Shown piece by piece: positions 1-22,737 of a DNA stretch of 64,000 bases. Source of the DNA: Asterias rubens. Its lineage: Eukaryota. A model generated the notes under the pieces. That model worked only from the letters and a program-made list of their open reading frames with translations. It ran no database searches and was not told the origin of the DNA. The position numbers and the translations under genes were made by a program. The stretch's first letter is position 1. Each line of letters starts with the position of its first letter. Location: the NCBI RefSeq assembly GCF_902459465.1, contig NW_022985734.1, forward strand, positions 1-64,000, read 5' to 3'.

Positions 1-1001
1 CTTTCTGAATTACGGTCCTTGTAAAGTAATAAAGTGCTGTATTTACGTGTAGACATCTTGTGCACTTCTATCAAGTCCCCAAATATCTCAAAAATTCCAG
101 ACAACAACCATCTAGAACTTCGCTTACATGATTCAAGACAACTTGCCTCACCACATTTGAGTTTTAGTAAAGATACAAATAAATCGTACATGTCTGCAAG
201 AAGAAACGCCTCATGACTGTTGCATAGCTTACAAATTTCCTTACAGGTCATGCAAAGTGCTGTTCTTGTGTGACATTTCTTTATGACTCTCTAAACTTAA
301 CTCAACATCCTCCAAACGTGTAACAGGTACTACTTTCCTTTTAGCCACAGAATAGCAAGTAAAGCAAAGAGAACTGAAAGTAGTAATTGTTACCTCGTCA
401 ATTGAAATATTTAGTTGCAGATATGCATTGTTAATATCCAGATTTGTACATGCATACCTTCTACAATTAACCAGAATGACACCACAAACCACACACTTTG
501 CATTTGACTGAATGTTGTATATGAAGATTTGTGTAAACTGCACAAAGAAACACAGCTTGGTATAAATAAACAGTCAATGGTTGGAAAACAGGATTGAAAA
601 GTTTCCAAAGAAATAGAGCTATCTGCCACTGAAACTGTTGAACACATGTCATATTTGTTAAGGTAACAAAGAGGTCTTTGCTTAGATCTTGTTTTTTCTG
701 GCGTATAGACTGGATTGTTACTTTTTTTTGTAAATTTGTGCCTGCATGCATTACAAATGCAACCATCCTCACTCAAATGTGGCAAGTAAGTTCTAAAATA
801 TTGTTTAACCTTTGAGTTGCTCAAGATGCTAAGATGGGTCCATTTTGTACTGGATCTTGAGCAAATTTGGCACGGACCACACTCAACTTTCTGACAAGGG
901 GGTCGAGCTCGTTTTGAACCCCCTTGAGATTGCTTCACCCCTGCAATGACATACGTTACCTCCTTGGCTTCCTGTTTTGTTGTTGTCCATTTGCCCATCA
1001 T
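1..1001 (-). pseudogene. N-terminal part of the Academ transposase (inverted copy) with 1-2 nt indels
   Basis: Starts MMGKWTTTKQEAKEVTYVIAGVKQSQGG at ATG 1001 and matches the 14543 ORF. Frameshifts near 525 (missing T) and 270 (missing CA) relative to the + copy. Confidence 0.8.
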
Positions 1002-1358
1002 TCCTCCAGGAAAACTTGACTGAAGCCTCCCAAGGTACCTGTGTAAAATGAATACGTGTATACACACTTAAATAACAAAACACACACGAACAAACAATGC
1101 AAATTAATGCTATAGTGCAGAAAGACTAAAACAAAAATATAAATGAACAGAAAAATAGATGAAATATTTGCAACAAAACAATCTTAAATCTTCTTGGCCA
1201 GGTGCTTCAAATTTGTTTGTTAAAACCTTTTCATTTCCAGGAAAGGAAAACATCTCAGTGCAGAAAAAAAAGTATCCATTGAAAATGCAACGTAATAAGG
1301 TTCTAAATTGTCAGACCTTACATGGCCAATTGAAAACCTTAATGATTGCTATAAAAAT

Positions 1359-2456
1359 TTATAAACTAACCTTCCATTTTCGCCGCCTCCGTCTTTTCAC
1401 GATTTGCTTTTTTCTTTTGCGTCGCCTCTTCCCTTGCTTGCGTGATGCAACATAAGGTGTCTCTGCCTTCGGAAGGCGCACTTGTTGGTGTGAAGCACCT
1501 CGAGAATGGTGAAAATTGCTGTTGACCTCCTCATACCGTATTGTGGCCATAGCCACATAAGGTTTGATGAAGTACATCACTGGTTTGGTACTAGACAAAC
1601 TCCTCCCAAGCTGCAAAAAACCTTCTCTGTCCTCGATGACTTGTCTTGACTTCCTCTGTTTTCTTGACATTTTGGGAGGCTTGGTTGTGACAGAAGGAGG
1701 AGGCTTAGTGGTGTCCGATGTCTTTGAGGTTGTACTGGAACTTGTGGGAGGCTTTGGGATGTCAATGCACCGCTTGGTCTTTGGGCATTTCGCTGAGATT
1801 TTCTTCCTCGGTGTTCGGACCAGTTTCTTCAGCTCATGTGGACAATGGGGTTGGGGTGTACCACGAGGGTCTATGGGTTTTGACATTTTCTCTAATTGCT
1901 TCTGTATAAGCCGGCTAAGAGGTAATTTCCGTCCCAGTTAAGATGAAGTCCATCTTTAGCAAGATGGCATTCATGGAACATGTCACTGAAATCTAAAAAC
2001 TTGCAATGTGAAAAATTGTGACAAATATTGGCCAGCTTAATATTGTGCATTACCCGAGATAGATTAAGTCGGCTATCATCTGAACGGGGTAAAATACCAC
2101 TTACCACTATCTCAGTAAGGGGGAAGTTTTCCCTTACAGTGGTAAGTAGTCTCCTGTAGGCTTGGATGTTGCTGTGAAGGAAGCCCTGTTCAAGGTTATT
2201 TGTTCCGACATGCAAAAATATAACGTCAGCAGTATGCAACTGATGGGCGTTATTAATAACATACTGACGAAGAATTTGCACAGTTGCCCCTCGACGAGTG
2301 TGCACGTCTGGGCTCAACAGGCAACTGTCAAAGTTCTCCCGCAAGTATTTAGTAAGGGAGTCACCCAATATCAGAGCACTAATCTTTCGAGGTGGTCCAA
2401 ACACAGGCTGTTGGGATGGTAGCTGTGGGTCTGGCCATTTCAGAGGTCGGCCTAAC
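1359..2456 (-). CDS. SGNH/GDSL hydrolase with a Thr/Pro/Lys-rich linker and a very basic C-terminal tail, encoded inside the Academ element
   Basis: SGNH blocks present: ILGDSL (catalytic Ser), RGAT, HVGTNN, DGLH (DxxH). Polypyrimidine tract plus CAG acceptor at 2457-2480. A 1-nt T-run deletion near 1918 splits ORFs 1892-2473 and 1359-1886; the + copy is continuous across this point. Confidence 0.85.
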
Positions 2457-3386
2457 CTGTAATAATCAAACAAATAAAAATAAAAATTGTCAACAAAAGT
2501 ACATTTTGAAAAAAAAAGGAGTAGTGAAAAAGGTAGAACAAATTTAATCTAGTTTAACCCAACCAGCAATCAATCCATACATTTTAAAAATAGAACCAAC
2601 TACTCAATCCCCTAACACTAACAGCCTCCTCGATTGTCATTACATAGCGAGGCCGAGGCTGAGACCAAGGCCGTCCGAAGTCGCCCTCAAACTGATGGAG
2701 GGATCATGATTAAATTGCAACTAAATGTTCAAGTTGGACTAATCTCATGTAGTAGGGCTAAATAAAATAGGTTCCATAATAAACATGACATGCCGTGTAA
2801 TTGCACACAATGACATTTTAATTGAGTTAATTGAGCTTTGACTCAGGGCCTAAAAAAAATTATTATAAATTAATAATAAATATTGAAACCAATGTATTGT
2901 CCTTACTCCTTGACCTTGTCATGCTTGTGTAGGCCTAATTAACAGTTAACAAATGGAGAATCCAAATATCCACCACAAACCAATTAAAACATTTTTTTTT
3001 TATTAAATACTATTTATAATTAAAGACCTACATAGTACATGTACTTGTAGGCCCTAAAAAATAATAATAATAATAGGCTAGCTCAGTTGGACAGTAGCTG
3101 GGCGCTATAAACAAAAATACATTAAATTAATTAGTTCAGAACAGTCATCAGTACTCTCAAAACACGAAGCAGCCGACAACAACAGCCATGCGTGTGAAAA
3201 CGTGCACGGTAAAATCGGTCACAAAACAAGAAATCTCGCGAAAAGCAAAAGTGCATTACGATCCTACATTGCCTTCGCCACACGTCAAATAATATACCAA
3301 ACGATAGCTTACAGTTACACTTTAATCTTTCGATGTCTAGTGGTTTTATTTTCTCTTTTTATTTAGCTGGGTCAGGGCGCTGCAAA

Positions 3387-3418
3387 CCAAAAACTACCCC
3401 AAGTCAATCCTGACACTA
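3387..3418 (-). repeat. Candidate 5' terminal inverted repeat of the Academ element (imperfect)
   Basis: CCAAAAACTACCCCAAGTCAATCCTGACACTA aligns with 22051-22085 CCAAAAAGACAAACCCCAAACAATCGGGAACACTA. Both end in ACACTA followed by TA, giving TAG...CTA termini. Confidence 0.5.
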
Positions 3419-3516
3419 TACAAAATGTTCAGTGGTAAAAAAAAGGGCTATAAAGTCATAGAAACTTAACAAATTTGGTATCATTTGACTCGGAAAAATA
3501 TTCTACGTGTACTTAC

Positions 3517-3524
3517 CACGCCAT
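3517..3524 (-). CDS. Candidate first coding exon (ATG GCG TG|gtaagt) of the coactosin-like gene, on the opposite strand from exons 2-4
   Basis: Strong GTAAGT donor at 3511-3516 (minus strand). The phase-2 TG completes a Trp codon with the first G of the exon at 23168, the usual split-Trp intron position in coactosins. No similarity to the normal coactosin N-terminal helix. Confidence 0.35.
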
Positions 3525-3799
3525 CTTGTGTGCCACCTGAAGCGTGTGAGCATCGTGCCGTGTGCAAAAAGGGTCGTCGAACTCTCGCAGTTTATCGCGC
3601 AAATCGCGCAGTCGCTTCTGCACGTTGGCTGTGCAGATAAAACTCGGGATTTGACCTCATTAACGCACGCAGTGCGGACTGACTGTACACCAACCACTCC
3701 AAGCCCCACCAAACACTATCAGTCACTCTACCATCAACCCTTTCACAATAACAAGTGCCTACATACATTAGTCTGACGATAACGCATTAAGAATTCGTC

Positions 3800-13046: not shown

Positions 13047-13310
13047 TTTTCAATCACTTGAAATACCATAATAACTCAAAGGAGAGCTTCACACACAAAA
13101 CATACACATTGAATCGATATTCTACTGGATACGTGGCTCTGTTCCCTTGAGTTTTTGAGTTTTCACACCGTGACGCAGAGTTTACGGGCACACCTTGGCA
13201 CAACAGCTCAACCAAACGATATTCTACTGGATACGTGGCTCTGTTCCCTTGAGTTTTTGAGTTTTCACACCGTGACGCAGAGTTTACGGGCACACCTTGG
13301 CACAACAGCT
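13047..13310 (-). other. Probable 5'-UTR exon of the CUB-LDLa gene
   Basis: GTGAGT donor on the minus strand at 13041-13046. The ATG-bearing exon has its own acceptor at 12329-12330, so an upstream exon is required. Confidence 0.45.
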
Positions 13311-13313
13311 CAA
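13115..13313. repeat. Perfect 97-bp tandem duplication (5-bp spacer) at the Academ junction
   Basis: 13115-13211 is identical to 13217-13313. Confidence 0.95.
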
Positions 13314-14117
13314 GCCTACAGGAGACTACTTACCACTGTAAGGGAAAACTTCCCCCTTACTGAGATAGTGGTAAGTGGTATTTTACCCCGTTCAGATGAT
13401 AGCCGACTTAATCTATCTCGGGTAATGCACAATATTAAGCTGGCCAATATTTGTCACAATTTTTCACATTGCAAGTTTTTAGATTTCAGTGACATGTTCC
13501 ATGAATGCCATCTTGCTAAAGATGGACTTCATCTTAACTGGGACGGAAATTACCTCTTTAGCCGGCTTATACAGAAGCAATTAGAGAAAATGTCAAAACC
13601 CATAGACCCTCGTGGTACACCCCAACCCCATTGTCCACATGAGCTGAAGAAACTGGTCCGAACACCGAGGAAGAAAATCTCAGCGAAATGCCCAAAGACC
13701 AAGCGGTGCATTGACATCCCAAAGCCTCCCACAAGTTCCAGTACAACCTCAAAGACATCGGACACCACTAAGCCTCCTCCTTCTGTCACAACCAAGCCTC
13801 CCAAAATGTCAAGAAAACAGAGGAAGTCAAGACAAGTCATCGAGGACAGAGAAGGTTTTTTGCAGCTTGGGAGGAGTTTGTCTAGTACCAAACCAGTGAT
13901 GTACTTCATCAAACCTTATGTGGCTATGGCCACAATACGGTATGAGGAGGTCAACAGCAATTTTCACCATTCTCGAGGTGCTTCACACCAACAAGTGCGC
14001 CTTCCGAAGGCAGAGACACCTTATGTTGCATCACGCAAGCAAGGGAAGAGGCGACGCAAAAGAAAAAAGCAAATCGTGAAAAGACGGAGGCGGCGAAAAT
14101 GGAAGGTTAGTTTATAA
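13311..14117 (+). CDS. 3' part of the SGNH hydrolase gene (from IQAYRR onwards; lacks the GDS and GTNN blocks at this position)
   Basis: Matches the minus-strand copy; retains DGLH and the basic tail. The first ~52 aa of the listed ORF 13155-14117 come from unrelated duplicated flank. Confidence 0.85.
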   Translation, partial: QAYRRLLTTVRENFPLTEIVVSGILPRSDDSRLNLSRVMHNIKLANICHNFSHCKFLDFSDMFHECHLAKDGLHLNWDGNYLFSRLIQKQLEKMSKPIDPRGTPQPHCPHELKKLVRTPRKKISAKCPKTKRCIDIPKPPTSSSTTSKTSDTTKPPPSVTTKPPKMSRKQRKSRQVIEDREGFLQLGRSLSSTKPVMYFIKPYVAMATIRYEEVNSNFHHSRGASHQQVRLPKAETPYVASRKQGKRRRKRKKQIVKRRRRRKWKVSL

Positions 14118-14478
14118 ATTTTTATAGCAATCATTAAGGTTTTCAATTGGCCATGTAAGGTCTGACAATTTAGAACCTTATTACGTTGCATTTTCAATGG
14201 ATACAGTTTTTTTTCTGCACTGAGATGTTTTCCTTTCCTGGAAATGAAAAGGTTTTAACAAACAAATTTGAAGCACCTGGCCAAGAAGATTTAAGATTGT
14301 TTTGTTGCAAATATTTCATCTATTTTTCTGTTCATTTATATTTTTTGTTTTAGTCTTTCTGCACTATAGCATTAATTTGCATTGTTTGTTCGTGTGATGT
14401 TTTGTTATTTAAGTGTGTATACACGTATTCATTTTACACAGGTACCTTGGGAGGCTTCAGTCAAGTTTTCCTGGAGGA

Positions 14479-17400
14479 ATGATGGGCAAATGGACAACAA
14501 CAAAACAGGAAGCCAAGGAGGTAACAATATGTCATTGCAGGGGTGAAGCAATCTCAAGGGGGTTCAAAACGAGCTCGACCCCCTTGTCAGAAAGTTGAGT
14601 GTGGTCCGTGCCAAATTTGCTCAAGATCCAGTACAAAATGGACCCATCTTAGCATCTTGAGCAACTCAAAGGTTAAACAATATTTTAGAACTTACTTGCC
14701 ACATTTGAGTGAGGATGGTTGCATTTGTAATGCATGCAGGCACAAATTTACAAAAAAAAGTAACAATCCAGTCTATACGCCAGAAAAAACAAGATCTAAG
14801 CAAAGACCTCTTTGTTACCTTAACAAATATGACATGTGTTCAACAGTTTCAGTGGCAGATAGCTCTATTTCTTTGGAAACTTTTCAATCCTGTTTTCCAA
14901 CCATTGACTGTTTATTTATACCAAGCTGTGTTTCTTTGTGCAGTTTACACAAATCTTTCATATACAACATTCAGTCAAATGCAAAGTGTGTGGTTTGTGG
15001 TGTCATTCTGGTTAATTGTAGAAGGTATGCATGTACAAATCTGGATATTAACAATGCATATCTGCAACTAAATATTTCAATTGACGAGGTAACAATTACT
15101 ACTTTCAGTTCTCTTTGCTTTACTTGCTATTCTGTCGCTAAAAGGAAAGTAGTACCTGTTACACGTTTGGAGGATGTTGAGTTAAGTTTAGAGAGTCATA
15201 AAGAAATGTCACACACAAGAACAGCACTTTGCATGACCTGTAAGGAAATTTGTAAGCTATGCAACAGTCATGAGGCGTTTCTTCTTGCAGACATGTACGA
15301 TTTATTTGTATCTTTACTAAAACTCAAATGTGGTGAGGCAAGTTGTCTTGAATCATGTAAGCGAAGTTCTAGATGGTTGTTGTCTGGAATTTTTGAGATA
15401 TTTGGGGACTTGATAGAAGTGCACAAGATGTCTACACGTAAATACAGCACTTTATTACTTTACAAGGACCTTAATTTCAGAAAGGCCTTGCATTTGTCAT
15501 GTGCCAAATTACGGTATCATTCTAAAAGAAGTGGGGATGAGATGTTCTCTGAAGATTTTAAACCCACATTAAATTCTGAAAGAGATATCAATAAGATGGC
15601 TCTTTATTTCCTGCCTCATATAAATAGAAAACTCAAGCACCAATCTGGAGAGATCACTAAACACTACACACAAAATCTAATGGAAACTGGCTCTTTTAAC
15701 TTTGATTCCCTGTTCGACATGATTGACCCAGAAGTGTGGAATACTGTTTCTTTGTTGACTGCAAACAACGATGAGTTAAAATATTTCAGTGAATGTGGAT
15801 CATTGTTTGGAAATGGCAAGCTTGTTTTCCCAAGCTACTCAAAACCACATGGAAGACAGCGACGCAACAGAAGAATAATTCTCATTATGGTTATGCAGTT
15901 CACTTACAATGAATCCAACAACTATCCATTTCATATTGTCATTGCAAATTGTGTGAAACGACTTTCACATTCATCAAAACTAATTAAATTGTTGAATCAG
16001 TCTGGCTTCTGCACTTCTGAAGACACTTTAGATAGATTCTTAGAAACCATAAAACAGCTTCGCCAACAGTCGGGTTTACTTTCTACACTAGAATCCAATA
16101 CTTTTACCATAGTAAGTGTTGATAATATTGATGTTCTTGCTAGCAGTGCTGCAGTCACATCACAGGGTTTAGGAAGAAGTTGGCATGGAACATCGGTCAT
16201 GGCACAACAGCCAAAACCCTTGACAGAAAAACTCTCCCCCACTGGAGAACTGATTGACATTATTGGACAAAAATCTTCTCCAATAACCTCTGACTTTCAA
16301 ACTGTACAAGTATATGGAGATGGGCGTTGCCTGTACAGATGCATTGCATCTTACAGCAATTCCAATATACTACTTTGTAAACGGAATGAGGTTGGTATAC
16401 CTGTTGATCAAACTATGTTCCATTTAGAGCAGCAATTTGCAGATTACTTCAGATATTCTGTTTGTCAACATTTAGAACAACATCTCGAACTTTTAGAAGA
16501 ACTTCCAGAGGGAATTAAACAGGTGCTTTTGGAATCTTCAAATGATCAATTTTATTCTTCATTTTCTGAAAAAGTTGCTGATGGCAGAAACTCTGGCACC
16601 TATGCTGGTCATTTGGAGATGTGTTCTCTAGCATGTGTATTACGTACAGATATATGTGTTTATCAGAAAACTGTCCACGGTCTGACACTAGTTGCAAGAT
16701 ATCCCACTAAGCCAATGTCCATGTATCACATCTGTTTACTGTACCGTCCCGGATCAAATGCTATTACAAGTCATTTTGATTTAATGTATCATGGTAGTTG
16801 TCGACCAAACTGCCAAATTCTACTTGATACAAATGACACAACATTCAATAAATGGCATGATGGAGTAAAAGGTTTTGGAGGTTTGATAAAACCAAATTTA
16901 CTAGATTTTGTTTCGGGTAGTCCACAAGAAGCTATCCAGAGGACATGTGATGACAGGCAATTGCATCCTCAGGCTTCTGCTGATGGTGAGGAAACGAGTA
17001 GTTCATCTGAACGTTATTTTACACCATCATTGATCATGGACGCACCCAAAAAACCTTCAGTAAGAAGAAAACTTAGCCCATCAAATCTCAACGTTCCTGA
17101 AAAAGGACATTTTGCTACCCCATTTTTCAAAACTTTCATTCGTCAACAGTTGTCAGTGAGTACTTTTTTTCCATCTGGCGAAGAAAAGCTTCAGCAGAAG
17201 CAACTTCACTATGACATGTTTATGCACATTTCAGAAAGATACGTTTCTGTTGTTGATGTAACAAAACATACTGTCCCTGGACTGAAGTGTAACATGTTAC
17301 TGCATTCAAAGGCCCGATGTAAAAAATCAAAGTTTTCTTACATTTATGTACTCAATGAGAAAGCTGACTGTGCTCAAACTGTAAAATCGGTCATTGGTCT

Positions 17401-20400
17401 TCTGTATGACCTTTTCAAAATTTCAAAATCCATTAACCACCTCGTTATTGCAGGTGATGGTGCAACAGTTAAGATATTGTTGGATGTAAAGAAAGAATAT
17501 GGTGAAGTATTGGACTGGGTTATACCCTATTTAGGTGATTGGCATGTATTGAAGAACTTTCAAGAAGTTGTAATGAAAGTGTTTTGGGATGCCGGCTTAA
17601 AGGACATCGCCAAGTTAACCCACAAAAATAGTACCTTGAACAATTTGAAAACTTGCAGTAATTTCAAAAGAACACATAGGTTTCTATTACAAGTTTATGA
17701 GGCAATTTATGTTCATCAATTCAAGTGTTTTCTGGATTGTAGAGATGGAAAAGATGAAAGTTCCATCTCTAATGAAGCTTTCCATAAAATTGTCACAAAC
17801 GTTGTGGAGCAAGTGCATATTCAAGGTGATTTCTGTGATTATTTTGATATTGAGGAGTTTGTGTCTAAGGTACATATGCCACTTCATGGGTGTCTACCAA
17901 CTTTGCTTGATGAATTCAATGAATTTTGTATCAAAATGGCTGAGAAGTATGAAACTTTCAAATTTTGGAATAGGTTTCTGAAAGAAGATTGTTTCTGCTA
18001 TATTCAGTTGTGGATAGCCATGCGAACGGGTAATTGGAATTTGCGTCTAGGTGCCCTAAAAGAAATGGGTCCTTTATTCCATGCCTTTGATAGGCAGAAC
18101 TACTCTAAAATGATTCCAATTCACCTGAGTCAAATGCATGGCCTACCAACCTACATATTAGACCATTTCAGAAACGGGGCGTTTGTTTCTAGTATACGTG
18201 GATTTAACTTTTCATCTGTTGGGATAGATGAAGCTCATGAAATGCTGATTAACAAAGACTGTAAAATGGCACTGTCTAGAAGCTTACCAACAAACATGGA
18301 AAAAATTTCCGGAACCTTGGAGTTTCAGGCTCAACTCCTTGACAACTTTCAAAGTCAATTGTCTGATTCTATTTTTAAACCTCTTCAGAGAGATTTTGCT
18401 CCATCTGTCATAATGTCTGAATTACAAAATGTTAAGGCATATTTTTCAAAGGTTTCCAGTTGTTCTATGTTCAGTGAAGATCAAGCACATACTCTTTACC
18501 ACCCTTTTGAACACACACCTGCCTCTGCAGTTCAACAGAAAGCTCTACTATCATACAGAGAGGTTGGAAACTCATCTTACGACACTTACGTGCGATTTAA
18601 TATTTTGAATGAAACCAGCACTGCCAAACCTGTCATTAGAAAGCATAGGCTGAAAACATTTGCCAAAGACAAAGTAACGAAGAGAACGATAAATTACTTA
18701 GAAAAGGAAAAAAAAATGATTACTCTTTGTTACAAAAGAACAATCTCATTTTCTGAACAGCACAACCAGCCTATTCATCAGCTTTTCCAATTTATTGAAA
18801 CTCCTCGAGCACTATGTACTCCTTCAGGCTTGCCGAGCAAAGGGGCTAAGTATATTATGTATAACCTCTTTGGCAAGAGATATTCACAATCATTTTCACC
18901 TATCACAGAGAACCACACTTTCCCACCTGGGACCTGTCTAATTGCAGAAGGAATGAACATCATATACATTAATCCACTGCCTGGTTTTAGATGTTTTGCA
19001 GAATATGCTTCGCTCATTGTGTCAAGATGGGTAACACCCTTTTTCAAAAAAAAGTATAAGGAAGTACGAATTCTCTTTGACCAGGTTCGCTCGCAAGGAA
19101 TCTCTCCAAAGGGCTTTGAGAGAGAACGACGAGATGCTGGCCAAGATGACGATATTGAAGTGTTTGATTCAATAACTGATCAAACACCTCTGCCTCAAAA
19201 TTGGTCAAAATTTCTCAAAGTGCGAACAAATAAACGAAAGTTATGCCAATATCTGTCTAATAAGTTAATAGACATTGTTTCAGCATCTTTTCAAACAACA
19301 GATCAAAAGTTTGTCACTTCTGGAGGTTTTCTGTCCAATGCCCCCGAAAGAACAGAATGGACAGGCAAATGTGTTACCTTGGCTGGCATATCATCACACA
19401 GTATCATTCATAATCATGAAGAAAGTGATACCCAAATATGGTTACATGTTAATGATACATCATGCTCATATGTTCATGTTTACTCTGTAGACAGGGATGT
19501 AGGCATGATAGGTTTGCCGTTATCTTTTGAGGGTAAAATAATAACAATTCAGTACAAGGCATCTGGAACTGATGACAAATATCTAAACCTAAACATACTG
19601 AGAACTGCATTAAGCAGAGATTCAGATCTGGCCCCACTAGTGAAGCATGGTTGCGATGTTCACAAAATAATGCAAATGCTATATATTTGCACTGGCTGTG
19701 ATTTTGTATCTTACTTTGCAAGACTTGGAAAGACAACATTCCTGAAAGTGTTTCTTCAGTTTGCAGAATTTATTTCAGGAAGTAGTTCTACTCAAACTGA
19801 TGGCCAGTTGTGTTTTGATGATGTACAATTTAACCATGATCGAGGGCTTCTTTCGTTTTATCGATTGGTTGGTTGTGTTTACTTCCAAGCCAACCGTGCA
19901 TCTTTGAATCAACATGCTAGTAATCCTGTAGAACTATTTGATAGCATTCAGTCATCTTCCATTGTAGATCATCATTCAAAGTTTCTTTCCATTATCCGTA
20001 AAGCTTCTTGGCAAGGTGTTTATGAAGACACTCTTCTTCCTTCCGACACTGCACTGTCTTTTCACTGGCTGAGGTCATGTTGGGTGAGCCATGTTTGGGG
20101 TAAATCACTCCAACCAATTTTTAATTACCCTGACTTAAACTTATATGGATGGGAGCACATTCTTGATTCTGGAGAGGTAACAATTAAATGGGATTCTACA
20201 TCAAATATGGAGAGAATACGTAAAAATGTACTTCACTTAACCAGAGGTTGTTCATGTGCTAAGAACAAATGTTCAAGTCGCCAATGTAAGTGCAAAAAAA
20301 TTAATGAAGCATGTGGCCCAGGTTGCACATGTAGAAATTGTGAAAACCGTCCTGTGCAAAGTACGCCAATTGTCTCTGTTCAAGATGGTGAGCAAACATT

Positions 20401-20557
20401 TTCTGATGATGAATCGGTGAGTTCATCCATCAGCTTAATTGGTGATGATCATGAATTAGATGAAGATGAGGTTCTTACTATATCAAGAAAGGGTCAAGAA
20501 GTGCAAGTTGTTGACAACCCATTTTCAGATGATAGTTTGTCAGGGGAGGAGTTTTAG
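14479..20557 (+). CDS. Academ transposase: Cys clusters - DDE core with inserted OTU domain - XPG/FEN1-like nuclease - Cys8 (CXC) finger - acidic tail
   Basis: DDE-like motifs IVSVDNID, IAGDGAT..LGDWH, SVGIDEAHEMLINK. XPG/PIN-like motifs IAEGM, LFDQ, K.FERERR, HEESDTQI, SVDRDV, TGCDFVSYF..GKTTF (H3TH). C-terminal GCSCAKNKCSSRQCKCKKINEACGPGCTCRNCEN. This matches the known AcademX architecture. The likely start is ATG 14479, with a 1-nt insertion near 14526 relative to the inverted copy. Confidence 0.82.
16270..16800 (+). other. OTU-family cysteine protease (deubiquitinase-like) domain within the transposase ORF
   Basis: VYGDGRCLYRCIA (Asp/Cys loop), YAGHLEMCSLA..ICVYQ, ICLLY..SHFD (His plus Asp). 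Confidence 0.8.
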
Positions 20558-22050
20558 TATTTACAGCAGTTAATTGTGTACAGTTGGTTGTCTTCTTCAT
20601 ATTTTCATAGTTGCTTTCAGTGATGACAAAAAGGTATGTTTTATCTAGATATATTCATTGTGTATTGCCCAAACTGTTGTGCCAAAAACTTACATCTTGT
20701 ATAATCGTTTATGTATATTGTCTTAATATGTGTTTTATGATGAGTGTGGCCCAAAATAGATATAAGGTTAAGGTGTTGTGTTTGTGCTAAAAATGTTTTA
20801 GATAATTTGGTTATATCCCAAGATGGGATGCCAGATATTGTAAATGTATGGATAACAAGCAGCTCCATCATTGTAAATTACGAGTTATCGTGTAATATGA
20901 TTTTTAAAGTATCTTATATGAACATGTGTTTAAGTGTTTAGAAAAGTGGTGCTTAACATTTAAAAGTAAGAAATATGGAAGCCCCTGAAACTTAGTTGAT
21001 GCATCTTTAGTGCAACACTTACATTACATTTCTCAACTATTTATTTTGCCAAAGAAACTGTAAACATTGCCAATGTAATGGGAAGAACTTGCCATACAGT
21101 TTATTTTTTGTGTTAACCTTATTTTATATAATTTGATACCTTGAAACATTATACAAAGTGTCATTTTAAATTAACTTGCAATGGGTATATAATTTTTTTT
21201 TTAGTTGAACAAGTTTTGAGGTACAGTTGTTACTACCGACAATGTTGAAGTTGGTACATTTTATTAATTTTAAGTGGAGCAGCTGAATATTATTAACTTC
21301 TCATTTAGCAATAAACTTTGTCATAAAAGGTTCATTTAAACATTGCCAACCTACGGGTAAGAACTTACCAAAGATACCTTGCAATGATGTCATGTATTAT
21401 ATTTGTGATTGTTTACTTTCATGTTTAAAATTAAGTTAAGCTAGCTTGCCATTGAACAGTTTGTCTTATAAAAGTATGCGGGTATAAAGTTTACTAAAAC
21501 TTGTTTTTGGTAGCTATTTTGTATTAATGTCAACAGGTGAACTAGCTCTGTTACACGTACCAAATATGTAAATACATTTTTGTAACAAGACCATTTAAAC
21601 ATTGCCAACCTACCAGTTACCACTTACCAAAGATCTTTTATATTTATATTTTTTATTACATCTGAACTTTTTTTGAACTGTGCCTTAACTTTGATAATTA
21701 TATAGTGTTACATGTTTGTGCAGTGTATGTGACTTAAAATAAAGGAACAGTTGATACGAAACAAATCTTATTCTGCTCACTAGAGTTTTTGTGTATCGAG
21801 CATAAAGTTTTATAAAGACTCAAACAAAAGGGCTTCAACCTTGTACCAAGTCATTCCTGACCAAAATTTAAAAAAAATTCTTCTGTCCTTCAAAATTTAA
21901 CCTTTTGTTAAATTAATAATACTCAGACCATCAACCCCTTTTAAATTATATCCTTAGTTCTCCAAGTACCCTAAAATCGTCCATACAAAATGTGCTTAGG
22001 CACCATTCCTTCCCCAAAGACCCGCCAAAAATACCCCCCCCCACCCTTCC

Positions 22051-22085
22051 CCAAAAAGACAAACCCCAAACAATCGGGAACACTA
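22051..22085 (+). repeat. Candidate 3' terminal inverted repeat of the Academ element
   Basis: See the 3387-3418 entry. Confidence 0.5.
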
Positions 22086-22737
22086 TAGCTAACAGTGGTC
22101 ACGAACTTTGTTTACATGTACATCCGGGTACGTACACTGGATGAGTGTGACGTTTCGCGGTTGACCAATCAGCGATCAGAAAATCCATAAGCAAACATGG
22201 CGGCGTATTCACCAAGAGACGTTAACGTTAAATTATGAGAAGTGTTGGCAAAACGAGCGCCCTGACTCAGCTAAATGAAATCAAATGTAAAAAGCTCAGC
22301 GTTTGGATAGAATATAACATTATCTATTCGGTAAGCCCAAATATACGTTGTGGTAGCATTGACAATTAATAGTTACCTCCATGTTTTACGAAGCAAACTG
22401 TTTCGTTTTGAAACACAATTTTCGAGTCCATTTTAGTACTAATAATTGCCAGCAAAATCATTAATTTGTACAACTGGATTAAAGGTCGGTTATTCATCTT
22501 TATAAATCTGTAAATATATTGACAGAAAATTACTTTGATCACATGAAATTGATGAAATTCCTGAGACTACACCACGCTCATTAAATATTCATGGAGAGGT
22601 CAAGCTCCCGAAACTCGTGCATACGCTGCAGATAAAAGAAACGGATATTGTGTGCAGTGCGGACTGACTGGCTATAAAACAGGAGATTGGAACTCATCAA
22701 TACGTATGTTGGGATAAACCAGCCCGAATATACTTAA

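What the first reader, a model, noticed from the sequence alone, without database searches (positions are those of the whole stretch)
1359..2456. SGNH/GDSL hydrolase gene carried inside an Academ DNA transposon
Seen: a complete catalytic set (GDS, G, GTNN, DGLH) lies between the candidate 5' TIR and the transposase, co-oriented with it and present in both pieces. Established: SGNH esterases are known cargo of non-LTR retrotransposon ORF1s (CR1/L2/RTEX groups). The canonical AcademX description is a single transposase-XPG-Cys8 ORF. I do not recall an SGNH gene in Academ, so this may be an undescribed two-gene Academ lineage. Its role (lipid/membrane association, deacylation, particle formation) is speculation.
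Basis: partly seen in the sequence, partly recalled or inferred. Interest (0 to 1): 0.8.

Follow-up and report, generated by a model that had tools for sequence, protein, structure and literature searches.

The report
Esterase gene inside Academ DNA transposon
A 10.9-kb cut-and-paste jumping gene of the starfish Asterias rubens carries, ahead of its transposase, its own expressed esterase gene of the type otherwise known from LINE retrotransposons, and relatives in sea urchins, brittle stars and other starfish keep the same layout, so this enzyme is a shared accessory of very different mobile elements.

Summary
Window 2456-1371 (minus strand) is exon 2 of an SGNH/GDSL esterase gene (ORF1). It lies inside a 10,885-bp element with 17-bp terminal inverted repeats and 4-bp target duplications.

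- **Copies:** the genome is Asterias rubens. It holds at least 7 copies that are 99% or more identical, and all carry ORF1 at the same place.
- **Other lineages:** at least four diverged lineages in this genome keep ORF1 upstream of the transposase. So do elements in Patiria miniata and Lytechinus variegatus, and four metagenome contig families.
- **Expression:** poly-A RNA reads show ORF1 spliced from an element-internal exon 1. That exon carries the start codon about 160 nt from the element end. The same transcript continues into the transposase exon.
- **Catalytic residues:** Ser, Gly, Asn, Asp and His are kept in nearly all of 50 family representatives.
- **Closest structure:** the zebrafish L2 LINE ORF1p esterase, with profile E = 2e-30. 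In a tree, the Academ-type and LINE-type esterases separate cleanly.
- **Junction (inferred):** in 7 lineages the ORF1 frame ends at a conserved GGGG-stop motif. This motif overlaps the first conserved transposase codons in the -1 frame, and that frame has no ATG. This suggests frameshift coupling like gag-pol.
- **Prior description:** no searchable paper links Academ to an esterase. Repbase and Dfam could not be checked.
- **This window:** neither copy here has an intact ORF1.

The parts
3669..3685 (-). 5' terminal inverted repeat of piece 1 (CAGTCAGTCCGCACTGC)
   Evidence: Homology among 7 copies ends exactly here. There is an exact inverted match to 22654-22670.
3517..3685 (-). Exon 1: 5' leader plus the ORF1 start codon (ATG 3524-3522), 8 nt before the GTAAGT donor
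   Evidence: Splice joint seen in poly-A RNA reads. The sequence CCAAGATGG..TG|GTRAGT is conserved in 4-6 lineages. Coordinates.
2457..3516 (-). Intron 1 (GT..AG, about 1.05 kb)
   Evidence: 6 joint reads, plus 27 and 13 short-overhang reads that carry the end of exon 1.
1371..2456 (-). Exon 2: body of ORF1, made of the SGNH esterase domain, a disordered Ser/Pro/Lys linker and a polybasic C-terminal helix. In this copy the frame is broken by a 1-bp loss at about 1917-1918.
1943..2365 (-). SGNH catalytic core: GDS 2365-2357, Gly 2296-2282, GTNN 2206-2195, DGLH 1954-1943
1039..1370 (-). Intron 2 (GT..AG). It holds the stop codon (1361-1359) that ends ORF1 at 368 aa if the intron is retained.
   Evidence: 6 joint reads plus 13 overhang reads. 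NCBI model P0002 uses this splice.
1..1038 (-). Exon 3 of piece 1: a 34-codon ORF1 extension, the GGGG-TGA junction (941-935) and the start of the transposase frame. It runs off the contig start.
   Evidence: (window = C64:1-64000).
13311..14105 (+). Piece 2: 5'-truncated exon 2 (block V and the tail only), joined to unrelated DNA and a 102-bp tandem duplication (13112-13315)
14106..14441 (+). Intron 2 of piece 2
14540..14546 (+). Conserved GGGG-TGA junction. The spliced ORF1 frame stops here, and the transposase frame (GGG GTG AAG) starts from the same letters at -1.
14543..20557 (+). Transposase open frame of 2004 codons: Cys-rich N-terminus, DUF6589 core with an OTU insert, an XPG/FEN-like nuclease region and a CXC Cys cluster
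22654..22670 (+). 3' terminal inverted repeat of piece 2

Best explanation
The stretch is ORF1 of an autonomous 10.9-kb Academ-type (AcademX-like) DNA transposon of Asterias rubens. ORF1 is an integral gene of the element and has been kept for a long time. It is not cargo picked up once.

Shown:
- The element has 17-bp TIRs and 4-bp TSDs.
- One element-internal promoter region gives a spliced poly-A transcript.
- Exon 1 is about 169 nt long and carries the ATG 8 nt before its donor. It is joined to exon 2, which holds the SGNH esterase, a disordered linker and a polybasic C-terminal helix.
- Exon 2 is joined to exon 3, which holds the transposase frame.
- The catalytic Ser/Gly/Asn/Asp/His residues are conserved across the family.
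- The same ORF1-then-transposase layout is kept in diverged lineages across three echinoderm classes.
- The esterase is homologous to LINE ORF1p esterases but forms a separate group.

Inferred:
- ORF1p is made in excess from this mRNA.
- The transposase has no ATG of its own upstream of its conserved zinc-finger-like N-terminus. It is reached when a ribosome translating ORF1 slips by -1 on G_GGG just before the ORF1 stop. That would give a rare ORF1-transposase fusion, as in gag-pol or IS3 OrfAB.
- By analogy with the ZfL2-1 ORF1p esterase, ORF1p is a low-turnover lipid esterase that binds acidic membranes through its basic surface. Its polybasic helix also looks like a nuclear-localisation or nucleic-acid-binding signal. 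It would help the very large transposase or transpososome at a membrane or nuclear-envelope step, or in nuclear delivery.
- The substrate and the exact step are unknown.
For: - **Copies and ends:** 7 copies at 99% identity or more share both ends. The TIR is CAGTCAGTCCGCACTGC and the TSDs are AACT, ACAA, CAAG, ATGG and TAAA. ORF1 sits 3.43 kb upstream of the same transposase segment in each copy. The upstream 627 bp is shared by 8 loci.
- **Mobilised derivatives:** two loci (C1, C17) carry an identical internal deletion. C1 has its own TSD (TAAA); C17's 5' end is irregular and shows no clear TSD.
- **RNA:** both introns are GT..AG and are supported by poly-A reads. ATG GCG TG|G TTA.. puts the exon-1 ATG in the SGNH frame.
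- **Exon 1 conservation:** the exon-1 design is conserved across lineages that share only about 28-50% protein identity.
- **Linkage elsewhere:** A. rubens L010, L011-13, L014/15 and L017; Patiria miniata L033 and Lytechinus variegatus L034; metagenome contigs L035, L039 and L044.
- **Enzyme:** Pfam hit above cut-off. The AF2 model has pLDDT above 90 over the domain, with SGNH-fold matches. Catalytic residues: Ser 40/40, Gly 48/48, Asn 50/50, Asp 47/49, His 48/49.
- **Relation to LINEs:** the family profile hits PDB 4c1b (ZfL2-1 ORF1p esterase) at E = 2e-30, against 4e-14 for the next hit, a PAF-AH-like protein. In the tree, 35 of 36 C-terminal-esterase proteins form one clade with 97/94 support. 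This clade includes two confirmed LINE ORF1s that sit next to APE-RT ORF2s, and it excludes all Academ-type sequences.
- **Junction:** the motif YTGC[A/T] GGGG T[G/A]A occurs in 7 lineages. The ORF1 frame is open up to it, which NCBI models P0002, P0012 and P0015 confirm by ending in ..G*. There is no ATG in the transposase frame. The only variation (G/A) keeps both the stop in frame 0 and Val in frame -1. The CTG variants rule out a conserved splice acceptor.
Against: - No read, peptide or reporter result shows frameshifting or a fusion protein.
- No significant RNA structure lies downstream of the motif (z from -1.4 to +1.8).
- P-site-only -1 slippage at GGGG is unusual in eukaryotes.
- Transposase-region RNA depth is low, and most reads over ORF1 may come from internal-deletion derivatives.
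- Deletion derivatives of the main family lose the ORF1 tail and still transposed. ORF1 is therefore not needed in cis.
- Esterase activity, lipid binding and nuclear targeting are argued only from homology with ZfL2-1 (PMC3905857) and from composition.
- Academ membership rests on TSD length, DUF6589, XPG-like motifs and a weak fold match, not on comparison with reference Academ sequences.
- More distant Academ-like transposase families in this genome have no SGNH gene nearby. The gene is therefore specific to one clade.
Confidence: 0.8

Rival explanations
1. The SGNH gene is a host gene, or a one-off captured gene fragment, that happens to lie inside this particular transposon family. It would be passenger cargo with no role for the element.
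For: DNA transposons do capture host genes. Fish texim SGNH genes are described as captured by Helitrons (PMC4021074). ORF1 has introns, like a host gene. Deletion derivatives without a complete ORF1 still moved.
Against: Linkage to the transposase holds in lineages with only 28-50% identity and across Asteroidea, Echinoidea and probably Ophiuroidea. The start codon lies in a conserved exon 1 next to the TIR. The ORF1 frame is joined to the transposase start by a conserved motif. The catalytic residues are under long-term constraint.
Confidence: 0.05
2. The SGNH ORF is a remnant of a LINE (CR1/L2-type ORF1) that was nested in, or recently recombined into, an Academ ancestor.
For: The closest solved structure is a LINE ORF1p esterase. 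LINE ORF1 esterases are abundant among the homologues.
Against: There is no RT, poly-A tail or TSD around ORF1. The architecture differs: the esterase is N-terminal, there is no upstream coiled coil, and there is a family-specific 'SPYV + polybasic' tail. Academ-type and LINE-type esterases are separated by a branch with 97/94 support, and a single Academ-type clade is not rejected (AU p = 0.39). An ancient exchange between TE classes remains possible and is compatible with the best explanation.
Confidence: 0.07
3. ORF1 and the transposase are two independently translated proteins, a true two-gene element. The transposase would be made from a rare alternative transcript or by non-AUG initiation, with no frameshift.
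For: No fusion evidence exists. Skipping exon 2 would put the exon-1 ATG in another frame of exon 3. GUG can serve as a weak start codon. Two-protein DNA transposons are known, such as PIF/Harbinger (PMC2836001, abstract).
Against: The exon-2-skipped frame stops after 54 codons in 4 of the 5 copies where it could be assembled. No exon1-to-exon3 joint was seen. Two lineages have GUA, not GUG, at the junction. In three lineages CTG replaces the AG that an acceptor would need. The exact overlap of the ORF1 stop with the transposase start is conserved in 7 lineages.
Confidence: 0.3
4. The element is not an Academ. It belongs to another superfamily or to an unnamed one that happens to share DUF6589.
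For: No reference Academ sequence could be compared. No Pfam XPG hit was found. The fold match to 5'-nucleases is weak (E = 4e-4, model pLDDT 57).
Against: 4-bp TSDs fit AcademX, which gives 3-4 bp (PMC10045372). There is one giant ORF in the order transposase core, then FEN/XPG-type motifs (FDx..K..RR, EESDTQ, SxDRD, GCDF..G), then a Cys cluster. An earlier follow-up on the same ORF reached the same class (s1-150130).
Confidence: 0.1

Closest known systems
ORF1p esterase of non-LTR retrotransposons (CR1, L2, RTEX; ZfL2-1 ORF1p, PDB 4c1b; Kapitonov & Jurka 2003; Schneider et al. 2013, PMC3905857)
   Same: It is a homologous SGNH domain and the best PDB match (E = 2e-30 with the family profile). 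It has the same position upstream of the element's enzyme gene, an intact catalytic set and a basic surface or tail.
   Different: The host element is a cut-and-paste DNA transposon, not a retroelement. The esterase is N-terminal and has no upstream coiled coil. It carries a conserved C-terminal 'SPYV + polybasic helix' module. It forms a separate phylogenetic group.
AcademX DNA transposons (Kapitonov & Jurka 2010; Kojima 2020, as cited in PMC10045372)
   Same: 4-bp TSDs, short TIRs, and one giant ORF with a transposase core, an XPG-like nuclease and a Cys-rich end.
   Different: It has an additional upstream esterase gene that shares the transcript with the transposase. It has a conserved GGGG-stop junction. 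The starfish lineage also has an OTU insert. None of these is mentioned in the papers I could search.
Texim SGNH genes next to Helitrons in fish, and 'texim-like' genes of sea urchin and amphioxus (Tomaszkiewicz et al. 2014, PMC4021074)
   Same: They are SGNH proteins related to CR1 esterases and PAF-AH and are associated with a DNA transposon. That paper lists Lytechinus and Strongylocentrotus members.
   Different: There the gene is read as a host gene captured by Helitrons, and the echinoderm copies are described as not linked to a TE. Here the echinoderm genes are ORF1 of Academ elements. I could not test whether fish texim falls inside this clade.
SGNH ORFs of Ngaro (DIRS-order) elements and of bdelloid Vesta LTR and Athena elements (PMC9210276, PMC5408684)
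   Same: An extra SGNH ORF recruited by a mobile element, with catalytic residues kept and function unknown.
   Different: Those are retroelements and the ORF lies downstream of pol or YR. The bdelloid paper reports independent captures.
Gag-pol of retroelements and OrfA-OrfAB of IS1/IS3 (programmed -1 frameshift); PIF/Harbinger ORF1 + transposase
   Same: An upstream accessory ORF whose translation leads into, or is needed with, the catalytic protein.
   Different: The frameshift here is only inferred. The motif (G_GGG followed by a stop) is not a classical X_XXY_YYZ heptamer. The PIF/Harbinger ORF1 is a Myb-like DNA binder, not an enzyme.

Membership tests
SGNH/GDSL hydrolase superfamily | Conserved blocks I (GDS), II (G), III (GxN) and V (DxxH) carrying the Ser-Asp-His triad and the oxyanion residues | tested here: met
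   All four blocks are present in the window copy. They are conserved in 40/40 to 50/50 family representatives.
SGNH/GDSL hydrolase superfamily | Profile match above the curated threshold, and the SGNH flavodoxin-like fold | tested here: met
   PF13472 scores 40.9 bits against a cut-off of 32.9. The AF2 model has domain pLDDT above 90, and Foldseek gives more than 200 SGNH hits at E <= 1e-3.
SGNH/GDSL hydrolase superfamily | Measured hydrolase activity | not testable with these tools
   Needs recombinant protein and pNP-ester assays.
LINE-type ORF1p esterase (CR1/L2/RTEX) | Specific sequence homology to the LINE ORF1p esterase domain | tested here: met
   4c1b is the top PDB hit: E = 5.8e-6 with a single sequence and 2e-30 with the profile.
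LINE-type ORF1p esterase (CR1/L2/RTEX) | Sits upstream of an APE/RT ORF2, with a coiled coil (or PHD) N-terminal to the esterase | tested here: not met
   The downstream ORF is a DUF6589 transposase. The esterase is N-terminal. Control LINE ORF1s (P0095, P0132) do have APE-RT downstream. The groups also separate in the tree.
AcademX DNA transposons | TSDs of 3-4 bp with short TIRs | tested here: met
   Five insertions have 4-bp TSDs and the TIR is 17 bp. The criterion is from PMC10045372.
AcademX DNA transposons | XPG-type nuclease fused C-terminal to the transposase | tested here: inconclusive
   FEN/XPG-like motifs are conserved in 3 lineages. The fold search gives XRN1/2, T5 FEN, mycobacterial FEN and GEN1, but weakly (best E = 4e-4) and from a low-confidence model. 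There is no Pfam XPG hit or PDB sequence hit.
AcademX DNA transposons | Transposase core homologous to reference Academ transposases | not testable with these tools
   Repbase/Dfam are not available. Only Pfam DUF6589 matched (E = 6e-11), and its link to Academ is not documented in the papers I could search.
AcademX DNA transposons | C-terminal Cys-rich cluster | tested here: inconclusive
   TCR/CXC (PF03638) scores E = 2.4e-3, 18.5 bits, below the 23.5 cut-off. It recurs in L035 and L039.
Texim family | Groups with fish Texim proteins in a tree | not tested
   No fish texim sequence was retrieved by the searches. The link rests on the species list in PMC4021074.
Programmed -1 frameshift systems | Slippery site at the frame overlap, with the upstream frame open and no start codon in the downstream frame | tested here: met
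   G_GGG followed by a stop in 7 lineages.
Programmed -1 frameshift systems | Downstream stimulatory RNA structure, and a detected frameshift product | tested here: not met
   There is no significant structure. No RNA indel at the site reaches 5% or more of reads. A protein product is not testable here.

The most novel reading that the evidence does not exclude
A whole clade of echinoderm Academ DNA transposons is organised like a retroelement. An abundant esterase 'ORF1p' and a rare ORF1-transposase fusion would both be made from one spliced mRNA, the fusion through a conserved -1 slip at G_GGG-stop. The same esterase module is shared by LINEs, Ngaro and LTR elements, Helitron-linked texim and Academ. 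Its role would therefore be a general need of mobile elements, such as a membrane, nuclear-envelope or host-defence step. It would not be something specific to RNA-mediated retrotransposition.
Probability: 0.35. Interest if true: 0.8.

Novelty: new variant of a known kind. Interest (0 to 1): 0.62.

Why it matters
The esterase of LINE ORF1 proteins has been explained in terms of RNP assembly on membranes. Here the same enzyme family is conserved as a spliced, expressed first gene of a cut-and-paste DNA transposon, which has no RNA intermediate. Any common function therefore cannot depend on an RNA intermediate. This narrows the hypotheses and gives a second, simpler system to test them in.

The finding also reinterprets 'texim-like' and 'uncharacterized' SGNH genes annotated in echinoderm genomes as transposon genes. 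It adds a second protein to the Academ superfamily description.

If the GGGG-stop junction is a recoding site, it would be a rare case of gag-pol-style expression in a eukaryotic DNA transposon.

Tried and rejected
- **Alternative first-exon ATG:** I considered an upstream out-of-frame ATG in exon 1 spliced to an acceptor at TTGCAG|GGGTG as the transposase start. I rejected it because that ATG is not conserved and three lineages have CTG instead of CAG.
- **20-nt mini-intron:** splicing out GTAACA..TTGCAG would fuse ORF1 and the transposase in frame. It is too short for a spliceosomal intron, is not conserved in L044, and no such gap appears in reads.
- **Exon-2 skipping as the transposase route:** no reads support it, and the frame closes after 54 codons in 4 of the 5 copies where it could be assembled.
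- **Downstream frameshift-stimulating hairpin:** not significant.
- **XPG by sequence:** no PDB or Pfam hit.
- **Amphioxus:** the SGNH gene P0022 has no Academ transposase beside it, only an unrelated 2118-codon ORF.
- **Papers and data not reachable:** Kojima 2020 could not be read. As a result, the distant Academ-like families and the context of L018 were judged from coordinates only.
- **dN/dS:** not attempted. Copies within a family are 99.7% alike, and between families synonymous sites are saturated.
Full report
**What is at the coordinates**

On the minus strand, ORF 2473-1892 encodes 193 residues with all four SGNH blocks: GDS, a block II Gly, GTNN and DGLH. Pfam Lipase_GDSL_2 matches above its curated cut-off (E = 4e-10, 40.9 bits against 32.9). 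Directly downstream, 1886-1359 encodes a Ser/Pro/Lys-rich region that ends in a polybasic run.

In other copies these two parts form one open frame. The window copy has lost one T at about 1917-1918.

A second, plus-strand piece (13311-22670) is almost identical to the first over their overlap. It starts inside the esterase domain, next to a 102-bp tandem duplication. It continues into a 2004-codon frame with DUF6589, OTU and CXC matches.

**The element**

The genome has 417.6 Mb in 150 contigs, and the window is the first 64 kb of contig C64. NCBI names on identical proteins identify it as Asterias rubens.

Comparing seven loci shows that homology begins and ends at the same bases. This defines a 10,885-bp element with the 17-bp TIR CAGTCAGTCCGCACTGC. 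Its 4-bp TSDs are AACT, ACAA, CAAG, ATGG and TAAA.

In the window, the 5' end of piece 1 is at 3685 and the 3' end of piece 2 is at 22670. The four bases flanking these ends differ (TGTA and GCTA). The two pieces are therefore not simply the two ends of one clean insertion.

Every full or near-full copy has the esterase gene at the same offset from the transposase. Two loci (C1, C17) share one internal deletion, in which element position 1885 is joined to 8020. C1 has its own TSD (TAAA). C17's 5' end is irregular and I saw no clear TSD there. A non-autonomous derivative therefore appears to have been mobilised.

**Expression and gene structure**

Poly-A RNA-seq reads of the same species were laid on the first 4.6 kb of a reference copy. 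They show two GT..AG introns.

- Intron 1 joins element position 169 to 1224.
- Exon 1 ends ..CCAAG ATG GCG TG|, and exon 2 starts G TTA GGC.. .
- The ATG in exon 1 is therefore in frame with the esterase, and the protein starts MAWLGRPLKW...
- Intron 2 removes the ORF1 stop. It extends the frame by 34 codons into the exon that holds the transposase.
- NCBI's model P0002 has exactly this junction.

ORF1 is thus 399 aa when intron 2 is spliced out and 368 aa when it is retained. It is intact in three copies and broken in the window copy, in C15 and in C32.

Many reads jump from within ORF1 to distal transposase sequence. These are transcripts of deletion derivatives. RNA depth over the transposase is low.

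**Is the gene a stable part of the element?**

Yes.

- In A. rubens, every more distant ORF1 homologue that I could inspect is followed by a transposase homologue or by a remnant left after an internal deletion. ORF1 identity in these is 28-49%. The loci are L010, L011-13, L014/15 and L017.
- The three C8 copies keep an intact ORF1 although most of the transposase is gone. NCBI annotates them as genes.
- The same order, ORF1 and then transposase, is found in Patiria miniata (L033) and Lytechinus variegatus (L034).
- It is also found on four metagenome contig families: L035/L036/L037, L039/L040 and L044.
- Named members of the protein clade come from Asterias, Patiria, Lytechinus pictus and L. 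variegatus, and Amphiura filiformis. Branchiostoma also appears, but there no Academ transposase lies beside the gene.
- Exon 1 itself is conserved between lineages. The conserved parts are the TIR, several short blocks, and CCAAGATGG(CG/AT)TG|GTRAGT at the same distance from the end. L034 and L035 have the same ATG-plus-donor design.
- More distant Academ-like transposase families in this genome (about 25% identity) have no SGNH match nearby. The gene therefore marks one clade, not the whole superfamily.

**The protein**

An alignment of 18 full-length relatives at about 27% identity keeps three features:

- the SGNH blocks;
- an IPPELKKL..PKK stretch;
- a C-terminal 'LP..SPYV.RK' motif followed by a polybasic run.

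AlphaFold gives a confident SGNH domain, a disordered linker and a confident long basic helix. Foldseek returns SGNH esterases, PAF-AH Ib and the ZfL2-1 esterase.

Among 50 representatives of the clade, the catalytic residues are almost never replaced.

By sequence, the nearest solved protein is the esterase domain of the zebrafish ZfL2-1 LINE ORF1p. It scores E = 5.8e-6 with one sequence and 2e-30 with the family profile. The next hit, a PAF-AH-like protein, scores 4e-14. ZfL2-1 ORF1p is a weak esterase that binds acidic phospholipids and liposomes (PMC3905857).

In a maximum-likelihood tree, 35 of 36 proteins with a C-terminal esterase form one clade with 97/94 support. That clade includes two that I confirmed as LINE ORF1s beside APE-RT ORF2s. 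All Academ-type sequences lie outside it, and a single Academ-type clade is not rejected (AU p = 0.39). The Academ esterase is therefore a sister group of the LINE esterases, not a recent LINE fragment.

**How the two proteins may be made (inference)**

In six of seven A. rubens copies, the transposase frame opens just after a TAA. It has no ATG before its conserved Cys-rich N-terminus.

The spliced ORF1 frame ends at CAG GGG TGA. The transposase reads GGG GTG AAG from the same letters, one base back.

The same overlap occurs in L044, L039, L035, L. variegatus L034, and the A. rubens L010 and C8 lineages. The motif is [C/T]TGC[A/T] GGGG T[G/A]A. Several points bear on its meaning:

- NCBI models P0002, P0012 and P0015 end exactly there.
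- The only variable base (G/A) preserves both a stop in the ORF1 frame and Val in the -1 frame.
- CTG variants exclude a conserved splice acceptor.
- GUA variants argue against non-AUG initiation.

I therefore favour a -1 slip of the Gly tRNA on G_GGG at the stop, which would give an ORF1-transposase fusion. This is not shown. There is no significant downstream RNA structure, no RNA indel at the site and no protein data.

**Class of the element**

The 4-bp TSDs fit AcademX, which gives 3-4 bp (PMC10045372). The region after the DUF6589 core carries FEN/XPG-type motifs conserved in three lineages.

A low-confidence model of that region matches XRN1/2, T5 FEN, mycobacterial FEN and GEN1, but only weakly. 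I accept the Academ label as likely. I could not compare the element with reference Academ sequences.

**Literature**

SGNH ORFs are described in several mobile elements:

- CR1, L2 and RTEX LINEs;
- Ngaro elements;
- bdelloid LTR and Athena elements (PMC3905857, PMC5408684, PMC9210276).

Fish texim SGNH genes lie next to Helitrons. Sea-urchin and amphioxus 'texim-like' genes were reported as not TE-linked (PMC4021074). Those echinoderm genes are probably the Academ ORF1s described here, but I did not test this.

No held paper combines Academ with esterase, GDSL or SGNH. Kojima 2020 was not available.

**Verdict**

This is a clade of Academ-type DNA transposons with a conserved, expressed first gene for an esterase of the LINE-ORF1 type. 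That gene is probably coupled in translation to the transposase.

It is a new variant of a known kind. I rate interest at about 0.6. The main uncertainty about novelty is what Repbase already records.

Noticed in passing
window 14535-14551 (+) and 930-946 (-); L044 3343; L039 5461; L035 4311; L034 13705; L010 and L013 minus strand: A conserved GGGG-T(G/A)A motif lies where the spliced ORF1 frame stops and the transposase frame begins at -1. No ATG is available to the transposase in any of the 7 lineages. This is a candidate recoding site.
   Followed up: partly
window 1-3685 and 13112-22670: The two inverted pieces overlap over 2.1 kb at nearly 100% identity. Piece 1 runs off the contig start and differs from other copies mainly by small indels, for example in a T run. 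The outer flanks (TGTA and GCTA) are not a matching TSD. Piece 2 is truncated next to a 102-bp tandem duplication (13112-13315). This points to a rearrangement or an assembly problem rather than one clean insertion.
   Followed up: partly
G000:C1:13.91 Mb and G000:C17:8.07 Mb (L026, L027): Two loci carry the same internal deletion derivative, with element position 1885 joined to 8020. The C1 locus has its own TSD (TAAA); the C17 5' end is irregular and shows no clear TSD. RNA reads reveal several further expressed deletion derivatives whose breakpoints lie inside ORF1.
   Followed up: partly
G000:C8:17133553, 19570185, 20784375 (L011-L013): Three copies of a diverged lineage keep an intact 372-378-codon ORF1, while the transposase is reduced to short N- and C-terminal remnants. 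NCBI annotates them as ordinary genes (LOC117293625, LOC117293708).
   Followed up: partly
L034, L035 (and partly L039) compared with window 16258-17040: The sea-urchin and metagenome relatives lack the transposase segment that holds the OTU domain (query residues about 572-835). The OTU insert is therefore specific to the starfish lineages, whereas ORF1 is older.
   Followed up: no
L038 10228-10764 and 13577-19933 (Branchiostoma belcheri): An SGNH gene of the same clade is followed by an uninterrupted 2118-codon ORF. That ORF has no Pfam match and no similarity to the Academ transposase. It may be another kind of element using the same esterase.
   Followed up: partly
(runs X15-X20): Runs labelled with four other coded organisms or samples hold 88-98% of the sampled words of the element's first 4.6 kb. 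Near-identical copies therefore exist outside the source sample, either in related species or through shared DNA. I did not resolve which.
   Followed up: no
G000:C18:6756463, C1:19477538, C22:5217125, C2:16602126, C12:11617772: A separate multi-copy group has 189-codon SGNH-only open frames (E about 1e-12 to the ORF1 profile). No Academ transposase hit is listed nearby. They could be LINE or Ngaro-type esterases.
   Followed up: no
L022/L029 (C15) and L025/L032 (C24c), element position about 7070: Two copies share an insertion of about 1.3 kb at the same internal position of the transposase region.
   Followed up: no
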